64,000 nucleotides of DNA, from contig NC_086374.1 of assembly GCF_036588685.1 (NCBI RefSeq), positions 2,480,001 to 2,544,000 of the forward strand, in the 5' to 3' direction. A model generated the notes under the pieces. That model was not told where the DNA came from, ran no database searches, and saw nothing but the letters and a program-made list of their open reading frames with translations. The stretch's first letter is position 1. Each line of letters begins with the position of its first letter. The translations under genes were made by a program, and so were the position numbers. Of the stretch, positions 29,446-58,654 are shown piece by piece. Source of the DNA: Mytilus trossulus. Its lineage: Eukaryota.

Positions 29446-32400
29446 ATGTCCTTTCAGTTGCAATCAGTTTTAATCACAGATGAAATTGACACTCAGTGTG
29501 TCGAAATTTTACAGAAGAATGGAATTCAAGTGGTGAAAAATACAAAGCTAACGAAAGAACAACTTTTGACAGAAATTCCAGTAAGTATCAAGTTCAGCCT
29601 TCAGGTGCTTATGACTTTTATGCATGCATCAACTATGTGTCAAGTTTAAATGCTGACGCTTTGGGTTCTCTAAACCAGTGAGTTATAATTTTTGCTGCCT
29701 TTTGCAGAATTTTACAAAAATAGTGAGGTTGAAATTAAAAATATGTCTGATGATGTTAGGGATATATGTCATTATACTCATATGCATATGTACAGGATAC
29801 TAGATAGGTTAAGTGTAACCAGTTATAACCAGTTTTCATGGCACTGTGTCTATGTACATGCATGTAGTCGGAGACATATTATTATATGTCTCTGATGTAG
29901 TCTACTACTTCATTTGTGCCCAGATGTAACCAGTTTTCATGGCATGTCTTTGCCTGTCATTGTTATAAAACTAGTATCCATGGCCAGAAAGAAGAATTCC
30001 CATGTTTTTACTGTCTATATCGTTGGTTATTGGATGATCTTTTTAATCAAGTATTAAAAAAACACAAAATATTATATAAAAATTTCTTTTTTAGTCACTA
30101 AAATCATGAGTGTTATACCTAGACCTGGTTTATATAATACAAACAAACAAAAAAAACTATATTGTATCCAAAGCAGATCCTTTTAAAATTGTTAGATTTT
30201 AATCTGGTTACCAATAGTCTGTGTCCTGTCTAGTAGTAGTATATTTGTTAAAATGTACAAATTATTTATTAATGATTAAAAGTAATATGTCTCATTCCAG
30301 TACACTAATCCTATAAACTGTTTACATCTTATGACTATTAAATCTGCCTTTTTACTTACAATGTAGAGGAGGATTAAATGTGGTCATTTTGAATTATTAA
30401 ACATGTTAAAGATGGATTATGATGATGTAATTACAGAATAGTACATGTATCTGTTGTCATCAGTGATGTTCCGCATTCTTCATGGAATTTCTCGTTGCAT
30501 TGAAGACCTGTTGGTGACTTTCTGCTGTTGTTTTTTCTATGGTCGGGTTGTCTCTTTGACACATTCCCCATTTCCATTCTCAATTTTATTCATCAAGTTA
30601 CCTCTCCTTTTTCTCTTCCAAAACCCATTAATTCATTGTAATTATTTATACTTTAGGATTGATATTTTTTTGGGCCCTTTATAGCTTGCTGTTCTGTGTG
30701 AGCCAAGGCTCTGTGTTGGGAACATGTCTTTGATATTAAGTGTTGTCAGCTTTAGATTTCTATCGTATTATCACTTTTTTTTTGTTAATAACAAAGATTT
30801 TATTTAAACATTTTGGTCAAATACTATGAAAATTCATTTCTGATTGAGTTCAGCTGAATATGTTTTTTTATTAAATATTTATAGAAATATGATGGACTGG
30901 TAGTTAGATCTGCTACCAAGGTAACAGCAGATGTCATCAATGCTGGAACCAACCTGAAGATAATTGGTCGTGCTGGTACAGGGGTCGATAACATCGACTG
31001 TGATGCTGCCACAAAACGAGGAATTATTGTGATGAAGTAAGAATACTTTGTATATATAGATCTATGTACATCATTGTTTTATTAAGCAGTTATGTATTTG
31101 TTTTAAATTTCAGCTCATTCACAACCAAAAAAATTACTTCTTACTATGTTAAAAGCAATTCTAGATCCACAATTACTCTTGTTTTTCATCTTTCCCAAAA
31201 TAGCTTCTTCACTGCTGATTGTGGTCATTTGAAACACTTAATCAAAGATGACACTACAATCTATATAATGCATATTTTAACAATAATTCTGATCTTTTTG
31301 TACTCTGAACAAAATTTCATACACCTTGTTATTGTTGTAACAAACACTTTAACCTACATAAAAGTTTTAACATATTTTACATGCACAGTATGTTTTATAA
31401 TAAGAGGAAACTAAAGGAAGCCACAGATCATTGTTGAATAATGACTTCATGAAAAAAATGAGTAACATAACTTCTTATGTATGTTAACAATTTCCATGTT
31501 CCATTTCAGTACACCAGGTGGAAACACTCTTAGTGCTGCTGAACATACTTGTACATTGATATGTGCTTTATCAAGGTAAATACTGCTGATTCTGACATCA
31601 CTCAACAACTTCTGTTCACCAAACACTTGCATAATTTTATACTTTTAAGATAATCCACCTTTTTTTTGGTGGTGGTGGTGGTGGTGGGGGGGGGGGTATC
31701 ATCAGTGGCTCACAGTTTCACTTGTTTTGTCCTGGAACACATACTAGTTTATAAAGCAATTTTAAAAGCAATTTTAAAAGAGAATTGAAAAGATTGTGCA
31801 ATGGTAAAAAAAAGTTATATGTCATCTTCAACGAAAATGTGCAGAATAAGATGCTATTTCCTCTTAGTATACAAAAAAAACATGCTGAGGTTTTACTAAC
31901 CAAGTATCCTAAAACTTGACTCTAAAAACGTAAGACCATATTATAACAGATAGTCTGAGTTATTGAAAAGTGGTGGTCCTACGATTTTGTCCACCAAAAT
32001 TTGCAAAGAACTGGCACAGTTTTAGTATTTTGCAACAGAAATATTTCCCTCGAAGACCACCAGGGGAAAAAGGTTTCAAGAACTGTCGATAGTTTATTTT
32101 TGTATTTAGATAATGTTAAATTCCATTGTGTTTTTTATTGATTTAGCTCTATCTATAACAATATGTTGTACCGATAAATGAAATATTTAAATTTTAAACA
32201 TGTTAAATGTAAATATTTCAGACATATTCATCGAGGTGATAGAGCTATGAAAGAGGAAAAATGGAGTGAAAGAAAAGTTCTGATGGGTAATGAGCTTTAT
32301 GGAAAAACCCTGGCTATTATAGGTTTAGGAAGAATTGGTAAAGAAGTGGCTCTAAGGATGCAGTCATTTGGAATGACAGTAAGTAACAATACTGCGTATA

Positions 32401-35400
32401 ATTGTATAGATCAAGTGAAATCATATCTGTACAATATATACACAGGCTTCACATCTAAATGCTGTCCATTTTAGGCTTACCAAGAATTAACATTAAGAAT
32501 TAAGATTTAAAATTTCAAGCAAAGAGTGATGGCATTTGCTACATGTGTAAAAGTGTTTTCCCAAGAATTCTCAAGGCATCAGAATACACACAAAATTATT
32601 TCATAAACTTGCTTTTTTATATTTTTTTCCATTTGACACTTTAAAATGACACATTTTATTTGATGTTTCTTGGGGAAATGTTGATTAAATAAATAATGTG
32701 ACCATTGTGGACTAAAGAAAGATTTTAAGATTTGTGGATGCAGTCATTTTTATTGCCTGCCAAGTAAATTGTGGAAGGCAAGACACAGGTGTTGCTTTTC
32801 TGGCACATCAAAAAATATAAAAAAAAAGATTTGGTATGATTGCCAATGAGACAACTGTCCACAAGACACCAAAATGACACAGACATTAACAACTATAGGT
32901 CACGGTACGGCCCTCAACAATGGGCAAAGCCCATACCACATTTGTTTGAAGACTATGAAGTCTTTAAAAAATTAAATGAACATCTTACTGCCATAATTTT
33001 TTTTATCACAAACTTTGATTTTCCGTTTCTACTTTCAGACCATTGGTTATGATCCTATCATCCCAGCTGAGGTTAGTGCAGAGTTTAACACAGAATGGAT
33101 GCCACTGGAGAAGATTTGGCCACTAGCTGATTATATTACAGTCCACACACCACTCATTCCACAGACCAGAAGTAAGTTGATGTGGTCGAGGATATATGTA
33201 GGTCTACTTTCTCTAATACTAGAAGTCAACTGACATCTTGGGATGTAAACAAATGAGTGCTTTTCCTCAAATATAAAGTCAAACCAACTGTTAAGATTTC
33301 CTTTTATTTTCCAAAGCTTTTTGTTTGGAATATACCTGTTGAAGAATATTATAGAAATGTATGCTCAATTTAAATTGTATCATTTTGAAATTATTCACAA
33401 TTTTAAAGCTAGAACCTCATATAACATAGAACGGTTCTTAATAATCCTGATATTTAAATGTTTCAATATACACGATAGAGTTGACAAGACAGTATTTATC
33501 AAAATAAGCCAAGTATTGAGAAAAATATCCCCAAAAAAGACCAAAGGATTAAGAATTTACTATTTGGTTTTCACTAATACCGTAACTAAGTACTCATTCA
33601 TTAAGATAGAAATATGTTGTGTCTATTTTTGTATTGACAAATGACCCACTATTCTGCATTTGTAATGAAAGGTTATTGTTATTTGTCTTTACAGATTTAA
33701 TAAATGACCAAGTATTCTCAGTGTGTAAGAAAGGTTATTGTTATTTGTCTTTACAGATTTAATAAATGACCAAGTATTCTCAGTGTGTAAGAAAGGTTAT
33801 TGTTATTTGTCTTTACAGATTTAATAAATGACCAAGTATTCTCAGTGTGTAAGAAAGGTTATTGTTTATTTGTCTTTACAGATTTAATAAATGACCAAGT
33901 ATTCTCAGTGTGTAAGAAAGGTTATTGTTATTTGTCTTTACAGATTTGATAAATGACCAAGTATTCTCAGTGTGTAAGAAAGGTTATTGTTATTTGTCTT
34001 TACAGATTTGATAAATGACCAAGTATTCTCAGTGTGTAAGAAAGGTTATTGTTTATTTGTCTTTACAGATTTGATAAATGACCAAGTATTCTCAGTGTGT
34101 AAGAAAGGTTATTGTTATTTGTCTTTACAGATTTAATAAATGACCAAGTATTCTCAGTGTGTAAGAAAGGTTATTGTTTATTTGTCTTTACAGATTTGAT
34201 AAATGACCAAGTATTCTCAGTGTGTAAGAAAGGTTATTGTTTATTTGTCTTTACAGATTTAATAAATGACCAAGTATTCTCAGTGTGTAAGAAAGGTTAT
34301 TGTTTATTTGTCTTTACAGATTTAATAAATGACCAAGTATTCTCAGTGTGTAAGAAAGGTTATTGTTATTTGTCTTTACAGATTTGATAAATGACCAAGT
34401 ATTCTCAGTGTGTAAGAAAGGTTATTGTTTATTTGTCTTTACAGATTTGATAAATGACCAAGTATTCTCAGTGTGTAAGAAAGGTTATTGTTTATTTGTC
34501 TTTACAGATTTAATAAATGACCAAGTATTCTCAGTGTGTAAGAAAGGTTATTGTTTATTTGTCTTTACAGATTTAATAAATGACCAAGTATTCTCAGTGT
34601 GTAAGAAAGGTTATTGTTATTTGTCTTTACAGATTTGATAAATGACCAAGTATTCTCAGTGTGTAAGAAAGGTTATTGTTATTTGTCTTTACAGATTTGA
34701 TAAATGACCAAGTATTCTCAGTGTGTAAGAAAGGTTATTGTTATTTGTCTTTACAGATTTGATAAATGACCAAGTATTCTCAGTGTGTAAGAAAGGTTAT
34801 TGTTATTTGTCTTTACAGATTTGATAAATGACCAAGTATTCTCAGTGTGTAAGAAAGGTTATTGTTATTTGTCTTTACAGATTTGATAAATGACCAAGTA
34901 TTCTCAGTGTGTAAGAAAGGTTATTGTTTATTTGTCTTTACAGATTTAATAAATGACCAAGTATTCTCAGTGTGTAAGAAAGGTTATTGTTTATTTGTCT
35001 TTACAGATTTGATAAATGACCAAGTATTCTCAGTGTGTAAGAAAGGTTATTGTTATTTGTCTTTACAGATTTGATAAATGACCAAGTATTCTCAGTGTGT
35101 AAGAAAGGTTATTGTTATTTGTCTTTACAGATTTGATAAATGACCAAGTATTCTCAGTGTGTAAGAAAGGTTATTGTTATTTGTCTTTACAGATTTGATA
35201 AATGACCAAGTATTCTCAGTGTGTAAGAAAGGTTATTGTTTATTTGTCTTTACAGATTTAATAAATGACCAAGTATTCTCAGTGTGTAAGAAAGGTTATT
35301 GTTTATTTGTCTTTACAGATTTGATAAATGACCAAGTATTCTCAGTGTGTAAGAAAGGTTATTGTTTATTTGTCTTTACAGATTTAATAAATGACCAAGT

Positions 35401-38400
35401 ATTCTCAGTGTGTAAGAAAGGTTATTGTTTATTTGTCTTTACAGATTTAATAAATGACCAAGTATTCTCAGTGTGTAAGAAAGGTTATTGTTTATTTGTC
35501 TTTACAGATTTAATAAATGACCAAGTATTCTCAGTGTGTAAGAAAGGTTATTGTTTATTTGTCTTTACAGATTTAATAAATGACCAAGTATTCTCAGTGT
35601 GTAAGAAAGGTTATTGTTTATTTGTCTTTACAGATTTGATAAATGACCAAGTATTCTCAGTGTGTAAGAAAGGTTATTGTTATTTGTCTTTACAGATTTG
35701 ATAAATGACCAAGTATTCTCAGTGTGTAAGAAAGGTGTTAAAGTGGTTAATGTAGCGAGAGGTGGCATCATAGAAGAGGCGGCCATCAAGAGAGCTATAG
35801 AATCAGGTCAATGTGGAGGAGCAGGTCTAGATGTCTTTGAAAGTGAGCCACCTAAAGATTTCACCTTAGCAAAGATGCCACAAGTATTAGCCACTCCACA
35901 TTTAGGAGCAAGTACCACTGAAGCACAGAAACGGGTGGCTGTTGAGATTGCAGAACAATTTGTTGATGTGGTGCGAGGAAAAAGTTTATTTGGTGCTGTA
36001 AGTTGATGGTTAAAATAAGTTTCTGCAGAATTACATTTGGTTTTGCAAATAAAAAAAAAAGATCTCATTTGGACTGCTTATACTCTTCAGGTCATCCAAA
36101 CATTTCCTTTTAAATTTTCTGACATAACAGATCTTTTCATTTGTTGAATATCTACTTTTAACAAAGTTACACAATGTAAATAATTATCTATAATTATCCA
36201 AAACATTTTTAGCTTTAGATATTGGTAGGTTTAATGTTTACACAAACACTATCAAATACATTTGTACAACTATAATTGCCATTTAAACTGTTAGTATGCT
36301 ATATCTAGCTGTTTAGAAAATGAGTTTGAAAACAGTCTTCAAGAACAAATAGAAAGATGGAAAGTGATTTGAAATAAGGGTGATGATGTTTGAGTTTTCA
36401 ATATTATTGTATTATGTTGCAGATAAATGCTCATGCTATGACAAATGCATTGAGTCCAGAATCTCGACCATGGGTAGTACTTGGTAGGAAGTTGGGACAA
36501 GTGGCAGCAGGTTTAAACCCAGGAAACGTAGAAAATATGCAAGTCACAACTTATGGTATGAAAATCTTTTATGTACATGCACAGCTAAATAAACTCCTCT
36601 TACAACATTTAATTTATATATTTATCTCCCTTTATAACAGTAGATTTATAAAATTATCTCCCTTTATAACAGTAGATTTATAAAATTATCTCCCTTTATA
36701 ACAGTAGATTTATAAAATTATCTCCCTTTATAACAGTAGATTTATATAATTATCTCCATTTATAACAGTAGATTTATAGAGGTATTGAGAATAAGTTATA
36801 ATTTTACATGAATATAGACATACTAGAACATAAACTAGTCATGCTTGTAGTTTCCTTTTCTCACCACAGCTTTTGAATTTATCATTATTTTTTATGCCCC
36901 CCAACAATAGTAGATTGGCATTATGTTTTCTAGTCTGTTCGTCCATCCTTTTGTGAGTCTGTCCGGCTTCAGGTTAAAGTTTTTAGTCAAGGTAGTATTT
37001 GACAACCCTTTGATATGATCTTTCTAATTTAAATGCCAAATTGATTTTGACCCCAATTCACGGTCCACTGAACATAGAAAATGATAATGTTGAGGTCTTA
37101 TCAACTTAAAACTTAGTACACATGTTCCCTATGATATGATCTTTCTTATTTGGCATTATTTTTTACAGCAATTTCAAGGTCAACTGAACATAGAAAATGA
37201 TAGTGCAAATGAGGCATCAGAGTGCTATGGACACATTCTTGTTTAGGCTAATATATTAAATCTCCTGTCAAAAGAGATTGATAAATCTTAAATATATATC
37301 TTCATAAAGATAAAGAAGTGTGGTATAATTGCCATTGAGCATCAGAATTCAAATAAAGTGGGTGTTAGCAATTATAGTCATCTTTAAAAAGGCCTTTACA
37401 TGAAAAATGTAAAACAAATCAAACGAGGAAACAAAGGTCTTATTGATAACAAAACAATTTAATATGAAAAACTTTTGACAGACATGAACCAATGACAACC
37501 TCAGAACTACACTGACTCACCTGACTTGGGATAGGCACAACAGGAATGTGGAAGCTTTAAACATGATTGTTAGTGCTCAATCCTGGCTTGTTTTTAATTA
37601 AAATATTTGGGAGTAAAATAAGAGGCATATCATCTCAGAAAAGTATTTAAATTGTGAAATCAATTTCAGTTTTATTAGTATATTTGTAATAAGTATGGAT
37701 AATTGGATATTGAAATTAATAAAACATTACCTGTAATTGTGCAGCATTGGTGACATTTTTTATGAGTGTTATTTTTTTCTAGGACCATCATTGAAACAAG
37801 CTGGGTCCTACTTGAGTGCAGCTATACTCTCAGGATTACTACAGAACTCTCCTGCATTAGGAGGAGGGGATAGTCCTACTCTTAATCTAGTCAATTCTCC
37901 TGCCTTGGCAAAACAAATGGGATTAAATGTTAGTGCATTTTTATAATACCACTATTTGTTAAAAAGTGAGATAATGGCATTTTGTGAAATCTGTTTACAA
38001 TCAGCATTTACCTTCAAGTTTGTCATTTTTGTTGTCTGCACCTATTTTATTAAACCCTAGCAATGCTTTATGAACTAGATGTACAAATTTAGTTTGAGTA
38101 GAATATACAATTAAGCAGGATTTGTAATTCAACTAATGTGATACCATGTGCTCTGTATTTTTAAACATATTTCTGAAGGAATGGCAATTATTTGAGTGAT
38201 CGGGCAAACTTGAACTATTTGACAAAAACAAATAAATTTAGAAATATTTTTTTCCTTGACTCAATTTTCATGAAATTTTCTGTTATCATTGTTGAGTAAC
38301 CAGGAGGAATATAAGAGCATTGTCCGGGCAATTATTGGAAAACTCTTTGAAGATATATTTTTGAATTAAGATATGTTTGTTTCTTGAAACGAAATGAAGG

Positions 38401-42027: not shown

Positions 42028-43493
42028 CATGTTCTTGTCTTAAATGTGCTTTTAGTTAGACACTGGACATTGACAAACCATACATCAACACAAATAAATA
42101 AGTCTTATAATATCCGTACATGTACTTGTCTTAAATTTGCATTTAGTTAGACACTGGACATTGACAAATCATACATCAACACACATAAATAAGTCTTATA
42201 ATATCAGTACATGTTCTTGTCTTAAATGTGCTTTTAGTTAGACACTGGACATTGACAAACCATACATCAACACAAATAAATAAGTCTTATAATATCCGTA
42301 CATGTACTTGTCTTAAATGTGCTTTTAGTTAGACACTGGACATTGACAAACCATACATCAACACACATAAATAAGTCTTATAATATCAGTACATGTTCTT
42401 GTCTTAAATGTGCTTTTAGTTAGACACTGGACATTGACAAATCATACATCAACACACATAAATAAGTCTTATAATATCCATACATGTAGTTGTCTTAAAT
42501 GTGCTTTTAGTTAGACACTGGACATTGACAAATCATACATCAACACACATAAATAAGTCTTATAATATCCGTACATGTACTTGTCTTAAATGTGCTTTTA
42601 GTTAGACACTGGACATTGACAAACCATACATCAACACACATAAATAAGTCTTATAATATCAGTACATGTTCTTGTCTTAAATGTGCTTTTAGTTAGACAC
42701 TGGACATTGACAAACCATACATCAACACAAATAAATAAGTCTTATAATATCCGTACATGTACTTGTCTTAAATGTGCTTTTAGTTAGACACTGGACATTG
42801 ACAAACCATACATCAACACAAATAAATAAGTCTTATAATATCAGTACATGTTCTTGTCTTAAATGTGCTTTTAGTTAGACACTGGACATTGACAAATCAT
42901 ACATCAACACACATAAATAAGTCTTATAATATCAGTACATGTTCTTGTCTTAAATGTGCTTTTAGTTAGACACTGGACATTGACAAATCATACATCAACA
43001 CAAATAAATAAGTCTTATAATATCCGTACATGTACTTGTCTTAAATGTGCTTTTAGTTAGACACTGGACATTGACAAACCATACATCAACACACATAAAT
43101 AAGTCTTATAATATCAGTACATGTTCTTGTCTTAAATGTGCATTTAGTTAGACACTGGACATTGACAAATCATACATCAACACACATAAATAAGTCTTAT
43201 AATATCAGTACATGTTCTTGTCTTAAATGTGCTTTTAGTTAGACACTGGACATTGACAAACCATACATCAACACAAATAAATAAGTCTTATAATATCCGT
43301 ACATGTACTTGTCTTAAATGTGCATTTAGTTAGACACTGGACATTGACAAATCATACATCAACACAAATAAATAAGTCTTATAATATCAGTACATGTTCT
43401 TGTCTTAAATGTGCTTTTAGTTAGACACTGGACATTGACAAACCATACATCAACACAAATAAATAAGTCTTATAATATCTGTACATGTACTTG
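42028..43493. repeat. 91-bp tandem satellite, 16 copies
   Basis: catgt(t/a)cttg recurs at 42028, 42119, 42210 ... 43484 (exactly 16x91). Confidence 0.95.
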
Positions 43494-43780
43494 CTTTCAG
43501 TACTTATTTTCCACCAATGACAGGGTAAACAAATATTAAATAATTGAAGCCTATTATCTGGAAAAATATTTTAGACAAAAAGTAGAACACTGACAAAGGC
43601 CAACAATACAACTTGAAACAAGATCCATAAAACATTAAATTTGACTGAATCTATGAGTTTAGTCCTTTTTATAAATGACAATTTGTAACTTGTAGCATTT
43701 CTTCCAATTATTTTAGAAATATTATAGATAGGACAGAAACTAAAGCAATTAACAAACACTATAACAATACATGTGCTACC

Positions 43781-46700
43781 AGTCACATTTGGACTTGATC
43801 TGTGATTGGTGATAATAAGCATTGTGTTTTATAAGTTGGAGTCACATTTGAACTTGATATGTGGTTGGTGATAATAAGCATTGTGTTGTATAAGTTGCAG
43901 TCTCAATTGCACTTGATCTGTGGGTTTGGTGATAATAAGCATTGTGTTTTATAAGTTACAGTCACATTTCCACTTGATCTGTGTTTGGTGATAATAAGCA
44001 TTGTGTTTTATAAGTTACAGTCACAGTTGGACTTGATCTGTGATTGGTGATAATAAGCATTGTGTTGTATAAGTTGCAGTCTCAATTGCACTTGATCTGT
44101 GTTTGGTGATAATAAACATTGTGTTTTATAAGTTGCAGTCACATTTCCACTTGATCTGTGTTTGGTGATAATAAGCATTGTGTTTTATAAGTTACAGTCA
44201 CATTTGGACTTGATCTGTGATTGGTGATAATAAGCATTGTGTTTTATAAGTTACAGTCACATTTGGACTTGATCTGTGTTTGTTGATAATAAGCATTGTG
44301 TTTTATAAGTTGCAGTCACATTTGGACTTGATCTGTGATTGGTGATAATAAGCATTGTGTTCTATAAGTTACAGTCACATTTGCACTTGATCTGTGATTG
44401 GTGATAATAAACATTTTGTTTTATAAGTTGCAGTCACATTTCCACTTGATCTGTGTTTGGTGATAATAAGCATTGTGTTTTATAAGTTGCAGTCACATTT
44501 GGACTTGATCTGTGTTTGGTGATAATAAGCTTTGTGTTTTATAAGTTGCAGTCACATTTGGACTTGATCTGTGATTGGTGATCATAAGCATTGTGTTTTA
44601 TAAGTTACAGTCACATTTGCACTTGATCTGTGTTTGATGATAATAAGCATTGTGTTTTATAAGTTGCAGTCACATTTGGACTTGATCTGTGATTGGTGAT
44701 CATAAGCATTGTGTTTTATAAGTTACAGTCACATTTTCACTTGATCTGTGTTTGGTGATAATAAGCATTGTGTTTTATAAGTTGAAGCCACATTTCCACT
44801 TGATCTGTGTTTGGTGATAATAAGCTTTGTGTTTTATAAGTTGCAGTCACATTTGGACTTGATCTGTGATTGGTGATCATAAGCATTGTGTTTTATAAGT
44901 TACAGTCACATTTGCACTTGATCTGTGTTTGATGATAATAAGCATTGTGTTTTATAAGTTGCAGTCACATTTGGACTTGATCTGTGATTGGTGATCATAA
45001 GCATTGTGTTTTATAAGTTACAGTCACATTTTCACTTGATCTGTGTTTGGTGATAATAAGCATTGTGTTTTATAAGTTGAAGCCACATTTCCACTTGATC
45101 TGTGTTTGGTGATAATAAGCATTGTGTTTTATAAGTTGCAGTCACATTTGGACTTGATCTGTGATTGGTGATAAAAAGCATTGTGTTTTATAAGTTACAG
45201 TCACATTTGCACTTGATCTGTATTTGTTGATAATAAGCATTGTGTTTTATAAGTTACAGTCACATTTGCACTTGATCTGTGTTTGGTGATAATAAGCATT
45301 GTGTTTTATAAGTTACAGTCACATTTGCACTTGATCTGTATTTGGTGATAATAAAACATTGTGTTTTATAAGTTGGAGTCACATTTGCACTAGATCTGTG
45401 TTTGGTGATTATAAGCATTGTGTTTTATAAGTTGCAGTCACATTTCCACTTGATCTGTGATTGGTGATAATAAACATTGTGTTTTATAAGTTGCAGTCAC
45501 ATTTGGACTTGATCTGTGTTTGGTGATAATAAGCATTGTGTTTTATAAGTTGCTGTCACATTTGGACTTGATCTGTGTTTGGTGATAATAAGCATTGTGT
45601 TTTATAAGTTGAAGCCACATTTCCACTTGATCTGTGTTTGGTGATAATAAGCATTGTGTTTTATAAGTTGCAGTCACATTTGGACTTGATCTGTGATTGG
45701 TGATAATAAGCATTGTGTTTTATAAGTTACAGTCACATTTGGACTTGATCTGTGTTTGGTGATAATAAGCATTGTGTTTTATAAGTTGCAGTCACATTTG
45801 GACTTGATCTGTGATTGGTGATAATAAGCATTGTGTTCTATAAGTTACAGTCACATTTGGACTTGATCTGTGTTTGGTGATAATAAGCATTGTGTTTTAT
45901 AAGTTGCAGTCACATTTGGACTTGATCTGTGATTGGTGATAATAAGCATTGTGTTCTATAAGTTACAGTCACATTTGCACTTGATCTGTGATTGGTGATA
46001 ATAAACATTGTGTTTAATAAGTTGCAGTCACATTTCCACTTGATCTGTGTTTGGTGATAATAAGCATTGTGTTTTATAAGTTGCAGTCACATTTGGACTT
46101 GATCTGTGTTTGGTGATAATAAGCATTGTGTTTTATAAGTTGCAGTCACATTTGGACTTGATCTGTGATTGGTGATCACAAGCATTGTGTTTTATAAGTT
46201 ACAGTCACATTTGCACTTGATCTGTGTTTGGTGATAATAAGCTTTGTGTTTTATAAGTTGCAGTCACATTTGGACTTGATCTGTGATTGGTGATCATAAG
46301 CATTGTGTTTTATAAGTTACAGTCACATTTGCACTTGATCTGTGTTTGATGATAATAAGCATTGTGTTTTATAAGTTGCAGTCACATTTGGACTTGATCT
46401 GTGATTGGTGATCATAAGCATTGTGTTTTATAAGTTACAGTCACATTTTCACTTGATCTGTGTTTGGTGATAATAAGCATTGTGTTTTATAAGTTGCAGT
46501 CACATTTGCACTTGATCTGTGATTGGTGATAATAAGCATTGTGTTTTATAAGTTCCAGTCACATTTGGACTTGATCTGTGTTTGGTGATAATAAGCATTG
46601 TGTTTTATAAGTTACAGTCACAATTGAACTTGATATGTGTTTGGTGATAATAAGCATTGTGTTTTATAAGTTCCTGTCACATTTGCACTTGATCTGTGTT

Positions 46701-48266
46701 TGGTGATAATAAGCATTGTGTTTTATAAGTTGAAGCCACATTTGCACTTGATCTGTATTTGGTGATAATAAGCATTGTGTTTTATAAGTTGCAGTCACAT
46801 TTGCACTTGATCTGTGATTGGTGATAATAAACATTGTGTTTTATAAGTTGCAGTCACAATTGCACTTGATCTGTGTTTGGTGATAATAAGCATTGTGTTT
46901 TATAAGTTGCAGTCACATTTGAACTTGACCTGTGTTTGGTGATAATAAGCATTGTGTTTTATAAGTTGTAGTCACAATTGCACTTGATCTGTGTTTGGTG
47001 ATAATAAGCATTGTCTTTTATAAGTTGCAGTCTCATTTGCACTTGATCTGTGTTCGGTGATAATAAGCTTTGTGTTTTATAAGTTGCAGTCACATTTAAA
47101 CTTGATCTGTGTTCGGTGATAATAAGCTTTGTGTTTTATAAGTTGCAGTCACATTTGCGCTAGATCTGTGTTTGGTGATAATAAGCTTTATGTTTTATAA
47201 GTTGCAATCTCATTTGCACTAGATCTGTGTTTGGTGATAATAAGCTTTGTGTTTTATAAGTTGCAGTCTCATTTGCACTAGATCTGTGTTTGGTGATAAT
47301 AAGCTTTGTGTTTTATAAGTTGTAGTCACATTTGCACTAGATCTGTGTTTGGTGATAATAAGCATTGTGTATTATAAGTTGCTATCTCATTTGCACTAGA
47401 TCTGTGTTTGGTGATAATAAGCATTGTGTTTTATAAGTTGCAGTCTCATTTGCACTTGATCTGTGTTTGGTGATAATAAGCATTGTGTTTTATAAGTTAC
47501 AGCCACATTTGAACTTGATCTGTGTTTGGTGAAAATAAGCATTGTGTTTTATAAGTTGCAGTCATATTTGAACTTGATCTGTGTTTGGTGATAATAAGCA
47601 TTGTGTTTTATAATTTGCAGTCACATTTGAACTTGATCTGTGTTTGATGATAATAAGCATTGTGTTTTATAAGTTGCAGTCACATTTGCACTAGATCTGT
47701 GTTTGGTGATTATAAGCATTGTGTTTTATAAGTTGCAGTCACATTTCCACTTGATCTATGATTGGTGATAATAAGCATTGTGTTTTATAAGTTGTAGTCA
47801 CATTTGAACTTGATCTGTGTTTGGTGATAATAAACATTGTGTTTTATAAGTTGGAGTCACATTTGCACTAGATCTGTGTTTGGTGATTATAAGCATTGTG
47901 TTTTATAAGTTGCAGTCACATTTCCACTTGATCTATGATTGGTGATAATAAGCATTGTGTTTTATAAGTTGCAGTCACATTTGCACTTGATCTGTGTTTG
48001 GTGATAATAAGCATTGTGTTTTATAAGTTGCTGTCACATTTGGACTTGATCTGTGTTTGGTGATAATAAGCATTGTGTTTTATAAGTTGCAATCTCATTT
48101 GCACTAGATCTGTGTTTGGTGATAATAAGCATTGTGTTTTATAAGTTGCAATCTCATTTGCACTAGATCTGTGTTTGGTGATAATAAGCATTGTGTTTTA
48201 TAAGTTGCTATCTCATTTGCACTAGATCTGTGTTTGGTGATAATGAGCATTGTGTTTTATAAGTTG
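43781..48266. repeat. 59-bp tandem satellite, ~76 copies
   Basis: Unit agtcacatttggacttgatctgtgtttggtgataataagcattgtgttttataagttgc; period 59 (43781, 43840 ...). Confidence 0.95.
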
Positions 48267-52010: not shown

Positions 52011-55000
52011 CTATTTCTTGTGATCTTCTTTGTAATTGTTGACGACATCTTCATAAGTAGGAGGGACTGTTTTGTTGTAACCATATACATCAGTAGGGGG
52101 CGGGGTTCTGTAATACTCTGCTTCTGTAATATCATCTCTATATCTTTCACCCTATAAAACACAATATAATTAGTATTAATAAAAGCATCATTTTTTATTT
52201 ATATTATTTTGTAGTATCTTTAATATTGGATAAAATTGCTAATTCAAGTGAGCATGGAATGATTATGGTCAGTTTGTAGTAATGATTCTGCTGACATAAG
52301 TGATGCCCAAAATCTTTATGGAAATGCCAAAATCGGGTGAAATACCTTTGCAAATATTTTCAGTGCATCACTAATATTCACCATGAAATATCCCCTACTT
52401 AAGTGTTCTGTCGATAGAGGAAGTAAATCCATGGTACTGAATGCCTTTCTCCCAATTTGTTTCTAATAAATGAAACTCCACGATTGTAGTTTGAATCAAC
52501 TCTACAAACTGGAATAATGAAACAGGAGTATATTTAAGCTATAAATAGTCACAATTGAGTTACATGTATGTCTTAGACTATTACAGGATTTCTAATGATA
52601 ACTGTATAATTATTTCAAATAGAATTTAATATGATTTCTGTTTGATACTGTTTTAAAAATGTCTCACATGTGCTTCTCAGGAGTGGACCATACATAGTGT
52701 TACGAATCATTTTATATCCAATTGAGGGTTGTATGATTTTAGATTCGCAATGACTAACATGTGCTAAATGAATGACTTTTTGACAATGAATTATTATAGA
52801 TAAGCATCTTAGACGCATATATGCCTCTTAATGAGAACCCTGGAATATAGGTTGGGTTTAACTTACATGTGTCAAAAATCTCTGTTTATTCAACAATTGA
52901 CTGTACATGTATATAGGTTGAGTGTGACTTACATTTGCCAGGGATGGCTGTTTGCTTGACAATGGACTGTATATAGGTTGAGAAGTACCAATAAAGATTC
53001 GACTGTCTCTGTATCTTGTCTTCCATAAACATAAACACATGGACAGCAGTACAAGGAAGAAAATTATACCACACCTACAATGATAAATATATAGACATTG
53101 ATAATAGACATTGATAACAAAACCGGCATGACAAGAGTAGTTTATCATGTCTATAGCATGTTTTTAAAGAGCCCAGGTGGTCGTGTGGTCTAGCCGGACG
53201 GCTGCAGTGCAGGCGATTTGGTGTCACGATATCACAGTAGCATGGGTTCGAATTCCGGCGAGGGAAGAACCAAAAATTTGTGAAAGCAAATTTACAGATC
53301 TAACATTGTTGGATTGATGTTTAGTCTAAATTGAAAACTACGTTCAAACCTATGATTGCATTGGATAAAAACTGCAATTTTTATACGTGTGCATATGATG
53401 TAAAACAAATTTCGTTGTAGAAGGCTCTAAAAACAGCACAAACAACATTTTCCAAAAGACCAAAAAAGTGAAAAAGTATATTTAAACCTAACGCATTTGA
53501 CTAACAGGTCGAACAACTGATGTTCTTTAACCCTGTTGACTGCCATTGGCGATTGCCAATTTAAATTGATCACAAGATGAAACAAAATGGATCTTAATAT
53601 AAATTTAATACTAAACTAATTTTTTTTTTAACTTGTGGCCACGATGTTATGCCACAAACATACAGTGTCAATATTTTTTTAGTACACCAGATCCGGATTA
53701 TATATACTGTAAATTCAGAAATTAATGCGAGGTTTTTATTATTGCGAAAAATGCGACTGAGTTGTAAACGCAATAATTTAAACTTGCATTTTGAAATTTT
53801 TTATATGAATTTAACAGGATTTTTTTCAAAATCGTAAAAATTAAAATCGCATTTAAGCCTAAAATCGCAATAAAAAATGCACGCAATAATTTCTGAATTT
53901 ACAGTAGATATATAGACACATGTCTTACCAGAAATACCACAGTTCCCAATTCCAAACTGTTTTATGCATATATTGTCTTACCAGAAGAGCCACAGTTCCC
54001 ACACTGTACATGACACACAGCACACACTGTCTTACCAGAAATACTATAATTCCGAAACTGTTTATGACATGCCGTATAAAATGACTAACCAGAAATACAA
54101 CAGTTTTCAAACTGACTGTATATGACACACAGCATATATTGTCCTAATAGAAATACCACAGTTCACAAACTGTAAATGACACACATCACATAATGTCTCT
54201 CCAGAAATACCACAGTTCCCAAACTGTATATGACACTCAGAATTATGAATATATTGTCTTACCAGAAATACCACAGTTCCTAGAGTATATGACACACAGC
54301 ACACACTGTCATGACTGTCTTACTAGAAATACCACAATTCCCAATTTGTTTATGACATACAGCACAAAATATCTTACCAGAAATACCACAGTTCTCAAAC
54401 TGTATATGCCACACAGCACAACATGACTTACCAGAAATGCCACAGTTCCCAAACTGTATTATATATGACACACAGCACAACATGACTTACCAGAAATACC
54501 ACAGTTCCCAAACTGTATATGACACACAGCATATATTATCTCCACAACAATACTCATTCTCCAAACATCTTTCACTGTCACAGTAATAGCCTTCTACCTG
54601 TAATGTTTTATTTTGAATTACTATAACATGTACATGTATAACAGATATCAGAACTTGTGTACCAAGAGAACACACAACAAGACTATTAATTATTAACTGC
54701 CAAACCATCTTAGGGTGAAACATTAATATTTGATTTTTGTTCTCTTTTACATGTATCTGAATCCAAATCAGTACAAAACAACGAATGTGTCCAAAGTACA
54801 CGGATGCGCCACTCGCACTATCCTTTTCCATGGACCATGAAATTGGGTAATAATCTAATTTGGCATTAAAATTGGAAAGATTATACTATAGGGAACATAT
54901 GTACTAAGTTTCAAGTTGATTGGACTTCAATTTCATCAAAAACTACCAGGACCAAAAACTTTAACCTGAACAGAAGCACAGACGAACGGATGGACGAACG

Positions 55001-58284: not shown

Positions 58285-58495
58285 AAAAAGGCAGGACAGA
58301 GATTACAACTAAGAAAAAGGCAGGACAGAGATTACAACTAAGAAAAAGGCAGGACAGAGATTGCAACTAAGAAAAAAGCAGGACAGATATTGCAACTAAG
58401 AAAAGGCAGTACAGAGATTGCAACTAAGAAAAAGGCAGGACAGAGTTTGCAACTAAGAAAAATACCAGGACAGAGATTACAACTAAGAAAAAGGC
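58285..58495. repeat. ~29-bp minisatellite running into an assembly gap
   Basis: aaaaaggcaggacagagattacaactaag, about 7 copies. Confidence 0.9.
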
Positions 58496-58654
58496 NNNNN
58501 NNNNNNNNNNNNNNNNNNNNNNNNNNNNNNNNNNNNNNNNNNNNNNNNNNNNNNNNNNNNNNNNNNNNNNNNNNNNNNNNNNNNNNNNNNNNNNNNNNNN
58601 NNNNNNNNNNNNNNNNNNNNNNNNNNNNNNNNNNNNNNNNNNNNNNNNNNNNNN
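58496..58654. other. Assembly gap (N run)
   Basis: 159 consecutive N. Confidence 1.

What the first reader, a model, noticed from the sequence alone, without database searches (positions are those of the whole stretch)
33661..35736. PHGDH intron contains 33 tandem copies of its own splice acceptor plus exon start
Seen: each 62/63-bp unit is polypyrimidine tract + CAG + the first 39 nt of exon 6 ([12 protein letters not shown]). Only the last acceptor (35695) leads into the rest of the exon. The last interval is a 62-bp unit, so read-through from any of the 32 upstream near-identical acceptors shifts frame and stops (YCYLSLQI*). Each unit also carries two potential donors, AAAG|GTTATT (39-nt exon) and CAGTGT|GTAAGA (30-nt exon), and both would be frame-preserving phase 1-1 micro-exons. 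Seen: microhomology tgtaatgaaaggt (33661, intron) versus tgtaagaaaggt (exon) marks the likely slippage seed. Inference: an otherwise intact metabolic gene must skip 32 decoys by exon definition, or the array tunes productive mRNA via NMD, adds micro-exon copies or supports recursive splicing.
Basis: partly seen in the sequence, partly recalled or inferred. Interest (0 to 1): 0.9.

Follow-up and report, generated by a model that had tools for sequence, protein, structure and literature searches.

The report
Splice-acceptor minisatellite in mollusc PHGDH intron
An intron of a mollusc serine-synthesis gene (PHGDH) holds 32 near-identical tandem copies of its own 3' splice site plus exon start, yet assembled transcripts from three RNA datasets join only to the last, genuine copy, so it is an unusually large case of a known oddity ("mirage" minisatellite), not a demonstrated regulatory device.

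Summary
There are 33 acceptors CTTTACAG|ATTT at 33695...35696: 32 full 62/63-bp units plus the genuine exon 6 start. The units are identical except for an A/G site and a T indel, and all 32 upstream acceptors run into a stop codon. The unit occurs only at this locus in the 1.3-Gb genome, and PHGDH is single-copy.

Contigs from three RNA runs, each from a different study, join the end of exon 5 (33171) directly to 35696, continue to 35997 and splice to 36423. No RNA contig carries decoy-only letters. All 14 differences in a diverged transcript are synonymous, so the gene is under purifying selection.

DNA contigs from another individual hold the unit as a collapsed 62-bp cycle at about 4x single-copy depth. 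This shows the array exists outside the assembly and hints that its length varies.

Such junction-spanning minisatellites are already described: amphioxus "mirages" (Adh3, globins, PGBD5) and the human F7, IFI6 and CBS donor VNTRs. This is therefore a new member of a known kind.

First-stage notes of this scan list many similar arrays elsewhere in this genome. I read two in this window; the notes for other pieces are unchecked.

NMD tuning or rare decoy use is not excluded, because only contigs were available, not raw reads.

The parts
33039..33171 (+). PHGDH exon 5 (start approximate), ending in donor GAA|GTAAGT
   Evidence: tblastn of PHGDH homologues. Its last 30 nt (33142-33171, unique in the window) stand directly in front of 35696 in the RNA contigs.
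33172..33633 (+). Unique 5' part of intron 5
   Evidence: Read directly. No significant similarity to the unit upstream of 33634.
33634..33673 (+). Decayed copy of the exon 6 start (edge unit E0): 33 of 40 positions match, with 3 indels
Evidence: Local alignment and BLAST at 87% over 33634-33694.
33674..35695 (+). Homogeneous array: a perfect T-rich tract plus CAG (33674-33694), then 32 full units (41 nt of exon-like start plus 21/22 nt of tract and CAG). These provide 32 decoy acceptors at 33695...35634
   Evidence: The unit is found nowhere else in the own genome. No Rfam family matches.
35696..35736 (+). First 41 nt of the real exon 6, which is the 3' edge copy of the repeat
   Evidence: Identical to the exon-like part of the G-type units. 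It encodes (N)[13 protein letters not shown], which aligns to human PHGDH residues 215-228.
35696..35997 (+). PHGDH exon 6 (302 nt), from the used acceptor at 35695|35696 to the donor GCT|GTAAGT
   Evidence: RNA contigs of X24, X20 and X6 fit from 35696 to 35997 and join to 36423. Match to PHGDH structures at E 4.6e-35.
36423..36555 (+). PHGDH exon 7, used as a positive control for splicing in the RNA runs
   Evidence: Joint 35997 to 36423 with GT..AG ends in three RNA runs. Sequence read.

Best explanation
This is a 'mirage' minisatellite: a tandem array that grew from a 62-bp segment straddling the intron 5/exon 6 boundary of the only PHGDH gene of a mollusc. The working exon is its 3' edge copy. 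A first duplication is old, because its exon-like part has decayed (33634-33673). The 32 inner units are young or homogenised by unequal exchange (inferred). Because the exon's first 41 nt are themselves the last repeat, exchange can add or remove units without touching the coding sequence, so the array can drift in length (inferred). Each unit carries a compact, complete 3' splice site. The last upstream AG lies 23 nt before the acceptor AG, so the branch point must be one of the A's at -20 or -14, followed by a T-rich tract and CAG (inferred from the sequence). Decoys 2-32 are identical to the true site from at least -62 to +41. The choice of the last site must therefore be set by what lies beyond +41: the 261-nt exon body and its strong donor at 35997|35998, that is, exon definition (inferred). 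The stable mRNA joins exon 5 to the last acceptor only (shown at contig level). The array is most likely a neutral or nearly neutral intronic VNTR.
For: Anatomy. The unit is restricted to this locus and PHGDH is single-copy. In three RNA runs from three studies, one contig each has the exon 5 end (33142-33171) directly before 35696, fits through to 35997 and joins 36423, and no RNA contig lies on 35634-35695. PHGDH homologues align across the exon 5/exon 6 joint without an insertion. All 14 differences between the window and the diverged X24/X20 transcript are synonymous third-position changes, so the gene is functional. An independent DNA run (X2) has a 92-nt contig at 35645-35736, exactly one 62-word cycle at word length 31, with depth 28.9 against 7.07 for the flanking contig. 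The edge unit is decayed while the inner units are uniform, as described for mirages, which likewise do not disturb splicing (PMC3087553, PMC3902484). Human F7 IVS7 uses only the authentic copy among identical sites (PMC1557585). Two further junction-spanning arrays lie in the same window, and many are noted elsewhere in this genome (unchecked).
Against: Only Logan contigs were available. They drop rare variants and cannot give levels, and transcripts with premature stops would be removed by NMD, so sizeable decoy use before decay is not excluded. Simple exon definition should discriminate only weakly between the true acceptor (302-nt exon) and decoys 32 and 31 (364 and 427 nt). The copy number of 32 in the reference individual was not verified with reads. 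The roughly 4x depth in X2 is a contig word depth, which the tool warns is not a copy number.
Confidence: 0.75

Rival explanations
1. Splicing sink or NMD tuner. A meaningful fraction of pre-mRNAs splice from exon 5 to one of the 32 decoys, acquire a premature stop and are degraded, so array length sets the productive PHGDH mRNA level (a VNTR expression QTL).
For: All 32 decoys are identical to the real site from -62 to +41, and each leads to a stop. The first decoy is transcribed about 2 kb before the real site. Exon definition alone should not exclude decoys 31 and 32. There is a hint of copy-number variation between individuals.
Against: No RNA contig in three runs holds the decoy-only letters 35675-35695 or the AAAGGT-TATTG junction. 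Described mirages and F7 pseudo-sites are silent (PMC3087553, PMC1557585). Junction arrays seem to occur in many unrelated genes of this genome, which fits a mutational process better than a gene-specific regulator.
Confidence: 0.12
2. The array exists, but the assembly misstates it: the number of units (32) or the 62/63 and A/G pattern is partly an assembly or polishing artefact.
For: The T indel lies in a short T run. The only independent DNA seen (X2) shows a pure 62-bp cycle with A at unit position 5, at about 4x depth rather than 32x. The 5-unit block repeat (units 17-21 = 22-26) is no more than shuffles give (888 of 5000).
Against: X2 is another individual, and minisatellites vary in length. 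The array is only 2.1 kb, which long reads span easily. Four unit types interspersed without periodicity are typical of real arrays.
Confidence: 0.15
3. Micro-exon birth, intron gain or sliding, or recursive splicing. Decoy exon-starts are used as 30- or 39-nt in-frame micro-exons, or the first 39 nt are supplied by a decoy and a new intron ends at AAAG|GTG inside exon 6, or the intron is removed stepwise.
For: Every unit has TGT|GTAAGA at +30 and AAG|GTTATT at +39, and both lengths are multiples of 3. A decoy 39-mer joined at 35735 would give an mRNA identical to the normal one. The mirage model of intron gain has been proposed (PMC3087553).
Against: RNA contigs show no inserted copies and no backward joints. 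The intron within a unit would be only 23-33 nt. The AG at 35733-35734 is preceded by purine-rich sequence with no pyrimidine tract. CAG|ATTTGA does not recreate a 5' splice site, so zero-length recursive splicing is impossible. AAG|GTTATT is a poor donor compared with the gene's own GTAAGT donors.
Confidence: 0.03

Closest known systems
[quoted passage not shown] Sources: Canestro et al. 2002 as cited in PMC3087553; PMC3902484
   Same: The tandem units span an exon-intron boundary, and the authentic exon is the edge copy. BflGb6 duplicates the 3' end of an intron plus the 5' part of the exon, exactly as here. Regular splicing is kept. Inner units evolve in concert while the edge unit is excluded from homogenisation. 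Length differs between haplotypes.
   Different: The host is a mollusc, not a cephalochordate. There are 32 near-perfect units of 62/63 bp, against 3-6 units of 150-160 bp at 81-100% identity in BflGb6. Somatic instability was not examined here.
Human F7 IVS7 37-bp VNTR and related donor-side junction minisatellites (IFI6/6-16, CBS IVS13, LMNB2, PDGF); PMC1557585
   Same: A minisatellite whose edge unit contains the splice junction, giving several to 25 pseudo-sites identical in sequence. In F7, LMNB2 and PDGF only the authentic site next to the exon is used. The arrays are polymorphic in length.
   Different: Those arrays reiterate 5' splice sites downstream of the exon. This one reiterates the 3' splice site upstream, so the used site is the last one transcribed, not the first. 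A 5'-to-3' scanning rule that picks the first site cannot explain it. In IFI6 and CBS the nearest pseudo-sites are used; no such use is seen here at contig level.
Intron gain by tandem duplication of an AGGT proto-splice site (Rogers 1989, cited in PMC3087553)
   Same: The duplication junction lies at AAAG|GT, and each copy has AG and GT signals.
   Different: The duplicated segment includes a pre-existing intron end. No new intron position is created, and the mRNA uses the old junction.

Membership tests
Mirage / splice-junction-spanning minisatellite | Head-to-tail array of minisatellite-size units (about 10-160 bp) | tested here: met
   Period 62/63 bp, 33.6 copies, 98% matches
Mirage / splice-junction-spanning minisatellite | The unit spans an exon-intron boundary, and the working exon/splice site is the edge copy of the array | tested here: met
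   Each unit is 41 nt of the exon 6 start plus the 21/22-nt intron end. The exon identity comes from PHGDH homology and the used junction is at 35696
Mirage / splice-junction-spanning minisatellite | Regular splicing is kept: the authentic site is used and no aberrant mRNA dominates | tested here: met
   Three RNA runs give exon 5 | 35696...35997 | 36423 and no contig on decoy-only letters. This is contig level only, so minor forms are not excluded
Mirage / splice-junction-spanning minisatellite | Concerted evolution of inner units, with the boundary unit excluded | tested here: met
   The 32 units differ at 2 sites only. The edge copy at 33634-33673 matches at 33 of 40 positions with 3 indels
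Mirage / splice-junction-spanning minisatellite | Length polymorphism between haplotypes or individuals | tested here: inconclusive
   The collapsed unit contig of X2 has depth 28.9 against 7.07 for the flank, against 32 units in the assembly. Contig depth is not a copy number
VNTR supplying alternative splice sites that are actually used (IFI6 6-16, CBS type) | [quoted passage not shown] | tested here: not met
   No such contig in X24, X20 or X6. Rare forms could be missed
Recursive splice site | A 3' splice site immediately followed by a regenerated 5' splice site (AG|GTRAGT) | tested here: not met
   The sequence is CAG|ATTTGA/ATTTAA in all 33 copies
Intron gain by tandem duplication (Rogers model) | A duplication within an exon creates a new intron at a new position that restores the mRNA | tested here: not met
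   The unit includes the old intron end. Homologues align without a gap across the old junction, and the mRNA uses 33171|35696
NMD-coupled unproductive splicing | An alternative site gives a premature stop AND is used at a regulated level | tested here: inconclusive
   Premature stops from all 32 decoys are shown. Use was not seen in contigs. Raw reads and NMD inhibition were not available

The most novel reading that the evidence does not exclude
Two readings remain open. (a) Array length, apparently anywhere from a few units to 32, diverts a length-dependent share of PHGDH pre-mRNA into decoy splicing and NMD, so the minisatellite acts as a natural expression dial for serine synthesis. (b) More broadly, this mollusc genome makes splice-junction-anchored minisatellites at a rate above chance through a junction-linked mutational mechanism. 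That would give dozens of natural experiments in which up to hundreds of identical 3' or 5' splice sites compete and the one next to the exon body is used.
Probability: 0.12. Interest if true: 0.7.

Novelty: new member of a known kind. Interest (0 to 1): 0.4.

Why it matters
It is a clean natural test of 3' splice-site choice. Thirty-three acceptors are identical from at least -62 to +41, and the stable mRNA uses the last. Selection must therefore be dictated by the exon body and downstream donor, not by the site itself or by first-come order. That is the mirror image of the human F7 donor case. The phenomenon was described mainly in amphioxus. Finding it in a mollusc, apparently in many genes, suggests that junction-spanning minisatellites are a wider feature of minisatellite-rich invertebrate genomes. 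It is also a warning for gene prediction: gene finders could pick the wrong one of 33 identical acceptors. For PHGDH itself nothing abnormal is shown.

Tried and rejected
- **Dispersed satellite or transposon origin:** rejected. The 125-bp double unit hits only this locus in the 1.3-Gb genome.
- **A second PHGDH copy or haplotig that would free this gene from constraint:** rejected. The next best exon 6 matches are 32-39% identical, so they are other dehydrogenases.
- **Structured RNA in the array:** no Rfam match.
- **Higher-order repeat structure as proof of block duplications:** units 17-21 equal units 22-26, but 888 of 5000 shuffles do as well, so this is not used as evidence.
- **Microhomology seed:** replaced by the decayed edge copy.
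- **Laying reads on the whole array:** The exon 5 junction was read from the loose ends.
- **Raw reads:** none were on offer. All 24 runs are Logan contigs.
- **Spliced gene model:** Exons were searched one at a time by reference.
- **Literature on molluscs or bivalves with junction minisatellites:** no hit in the library. The original Canestro 2002 paper is not held and is cited through PMC3087553.
Full report
**1. Observation**

Tandem Repeats Finder reports one array at 33634-35736 with period 63, 33.6 copies and 98% matches. An exact scan finds 33 occurrences of CTTTACAG|ATTT, with the exon-like part starting at 33695, 33757 ... 35634, 35696. Thirty-two are full units: 15 of 62 bp and 17 of 63 bp. 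The 33rd is the real start of exon 6.

The 32 units are identical except for two two-state sites: A or G at unit position 5, and one T more or less in TTGTT(T)ATTT. All four combinations occur (A2 5, A3 10, G2 10, G3 7).

Each unit consists of 41 nt identical to the exon start followed by 21/22 nt of T-rich tract ending in CAG.

Reading from exon 5 (phase 1) into any of the 32 upstream acceptors ends in ...[11 protein letters not shown]. The 63-bp units keep the frame, the 62-bp units shift it into ATT TGA/TAA, and the last unit is 62 bp. The donor-like sites TGT|GTAAGA (+30) and AAG|GTTATT (+39) are present in every unit.

**2. The gene**

tblastn with full-length homologues places PHGDH exons at about 29446-29580, 30880-31034, 31505-31576, 32220-32375, 33039-33171 and 35696-35997, with later exons further on. 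The homologues run across the exon 5/exon 6 joint without an insertion.

Exon 6 matches human PHGDH residues 215-313 at E 4.6e-35. The best library relatives are PHGDH of a sea cucumber, fishes and a crab, at 62-69% identity.

Within the own genome (1.3 Gb, 541 contigs), exon 6 has no second copy; the next hits are 32-39% identical. The repeat unit occurs only at this locus. Run labels show the organism is a mollusc.

**3. RNA evidence**

I therefore laid only 35634-36600, which covers one unit, exon 6, intron 6 and exon 7, and read the upstream junction from the loose ends. All runs on offer are Logan contigs, so levels and rare forms cannot be seen.

In X24 (PacBio cDNA), X20 (RNA-seq) and X6, which belong to three studies, one contig each starts to fit exactly at 35696. 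It is preceded by TCCACACACCACTCATTCCACAGACCAGAA, which is window 33142-33171, the unique end of exon 5. Each contig continues to 35997 and joins 36423 with GT..AG ends.

No RNA contig lies on 35634-35695. There are no inserted repeat copies and no backward joints.

The stable mRNA therefore joins exon 5 to the last acceptor.

The X24/X20 transcript differs from the window at 14 sites in exons 6-7. All are synonymous third-position changes, so the gene is under purifying selection. One of these differences is A for G at 35700, the same A/G state that varies among the units.

**4. Independent DNA**

Run X2, a different individual under another organism label, is under 1% diverged in the flank. 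It gives two contigs:

- A 92-nt contig at 35645-35736, depth 28.9.
- A 950-nt contig that begins at 35707, depth 7.07.

With 31-letter words, 92 nt is exactly one closed cycle of a 62-bp period (62 + 30). The flank contig starts at the first word that contains the exon-specific G at 35737.

This is what a collapsed tandem array looks like. It proves that the duplication junction (exon-like part followed by the T-rich tract) exists outside the assembly.

The depth ratio of about 4 hints at far fewer units in that individual. The tool warns that contig depth is not a copy number, so this is a lead only. The number 32 and the 62/63 pattern in the reference individual remain unverified.

**5. History**

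Upstream of the first perfect unit, 33634-33673 aligns to the exon-like part with 33 of 40 matches and 3 indels. The following tract, 33674-33694, is perfect. The alignment score is 83 against a maximum of 29 in 500 shuffles, and BLAST gives 87% identity.

I infer an old first duplication, followed by later expansion and homogenisation by unequal exchange that cannot reach the outer edge. The same pattern is described for amphioxus mirages (PMC3087553).

A 5-unit block repeat (units 17-21 = 22-26) is not more than chance.

Because the exon's first 41 nt are the last repeat, unequal exchange changes the unit number without altering the coding sequence.

**6. Mechanism**

Within a unit, the last AG before the acceptor AG is 23 nt upstream. 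The branch point must therefore be one of the A's at -20 or -14, and each unit carries a complete compact 3' splice site (inferred).

Decoys 2-32 equal the real site from at least -62 to +41. Only the sequence beyond +41, namely the 261-nt exon body and the GCT|GTAAGT donor, can mark the last site. This points to exon definition (inferred, not tested).

Weak points of this account:

- Decoys 32 and 31 would give exons of 364 and 427 nt, which are not obviously too long.
- From my own knowledge, in-vitro work with duplicated sites (Reed and Maniatis 1986; Fu et al. 1992) tends to favour the site proximal to the partner site.

Some decoy use followed by NMD therefore remains possible.

**7. Comparison with known cases**

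Junction-spanning minisatellites are described.

- **Amphioxus 'mirages':** in Adh3, TnC, PGBD5 and the globins. They include BflGb6, which has 3-6 units of 150-160 bp made of the intron 3' end plus the exon 5' part, with normal splicing, length differences between haplotypes and edge-unit divergence (PMC3087553, PMC3902484).
- **Human donor-side cases:** F7 IVS7, LMNB2 and PDGF use only the authentic site. IFI6 and CBS also use the nearest pseudo-sites (PMC1557585).

The present array meets the tested mirage criteria. It differs in host (mollusc), in side (acceptor, the rarer case) and in size and perfection (32 units).

No paper on such arrays in bivalves or molluscs turned up.

**8. Context in this genome**

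Two more junction-spanning repeats lie in the same window:

- About 11 degenerate copies of an exon end plus GTAAG donor at 53921-54535, minus strand.
- A 66-bp duplication with two donors at 52845-52971.

First-stage notes of this scan list at least two dozen further splice-junction arrays on other pieces of this genome, some with 85-208 copies. I could not check these.

This favours a genome-wide mutational process in a minisatellite-rich genome over a PHGDH-specific device. Arrays cover roughly 15% of this window.

**9. Verdict**

Noticed in passing
window 53921-54535 (minus strand): About 11 degenerate tandem copies (54-bp period, roughly 71-75% alike) of the end of a Cys-rich exon (...[14 protein letters not shown]) plus its GTAAG donor. 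This is a donor-side counterpart of the PHGDH array. The first copy adjoins the exon body.
   Followed up: partly
window 52845-52971 (minus strand): A 66-bp unit at 1.9 copies that duplicates CAACCTATATACA...ATGTAAGT, giving two donor-like sites in tandem in the same gene.
   Followed up: partly
window 42028-43493 and 43780-48266: Two large minisatellites just downstream of PHGDH: 91 bp x 16 at 96% matches, and 59 bp x 76 at 92%. The second has strong GC and AT skew. Their relation to genes was not examined.
   Followed up: no
window 36612-36778: A 32-bp x 5.2 repeat in the intron after PHGDH exon 7. The DNA contig of run X2 stops fitting at 36598 and runs on unlike, so this repeat probably differs between individuals.
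   Followed up: no
window 35700: The A/G state that varies among repeat units is also a synonymous difference (TTG/TTA Leu) in the real exon between the window (G) and the transcripts of runs X24/X20 (A). The collapsed repeat contig of DNA run X2 also reads A. This suggests exchange between exon and array, or an old polymorphism captured by the array.
   Followed up: partly
window 58285-58654: A 29-bp x 7.3 repeat (58285-58495) runs directly into the N stretch at 58496-58654. The N stretch was left as it is.
   Followed up: no
same genome, other pieces (first-stage notes): At least two dozen first-reader notes describe tandem arrays built from a gene's own splice junction, some with 85-208 copies. 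If confirmed, this is a genome-wide class in this mollusc.
   Followed up: no
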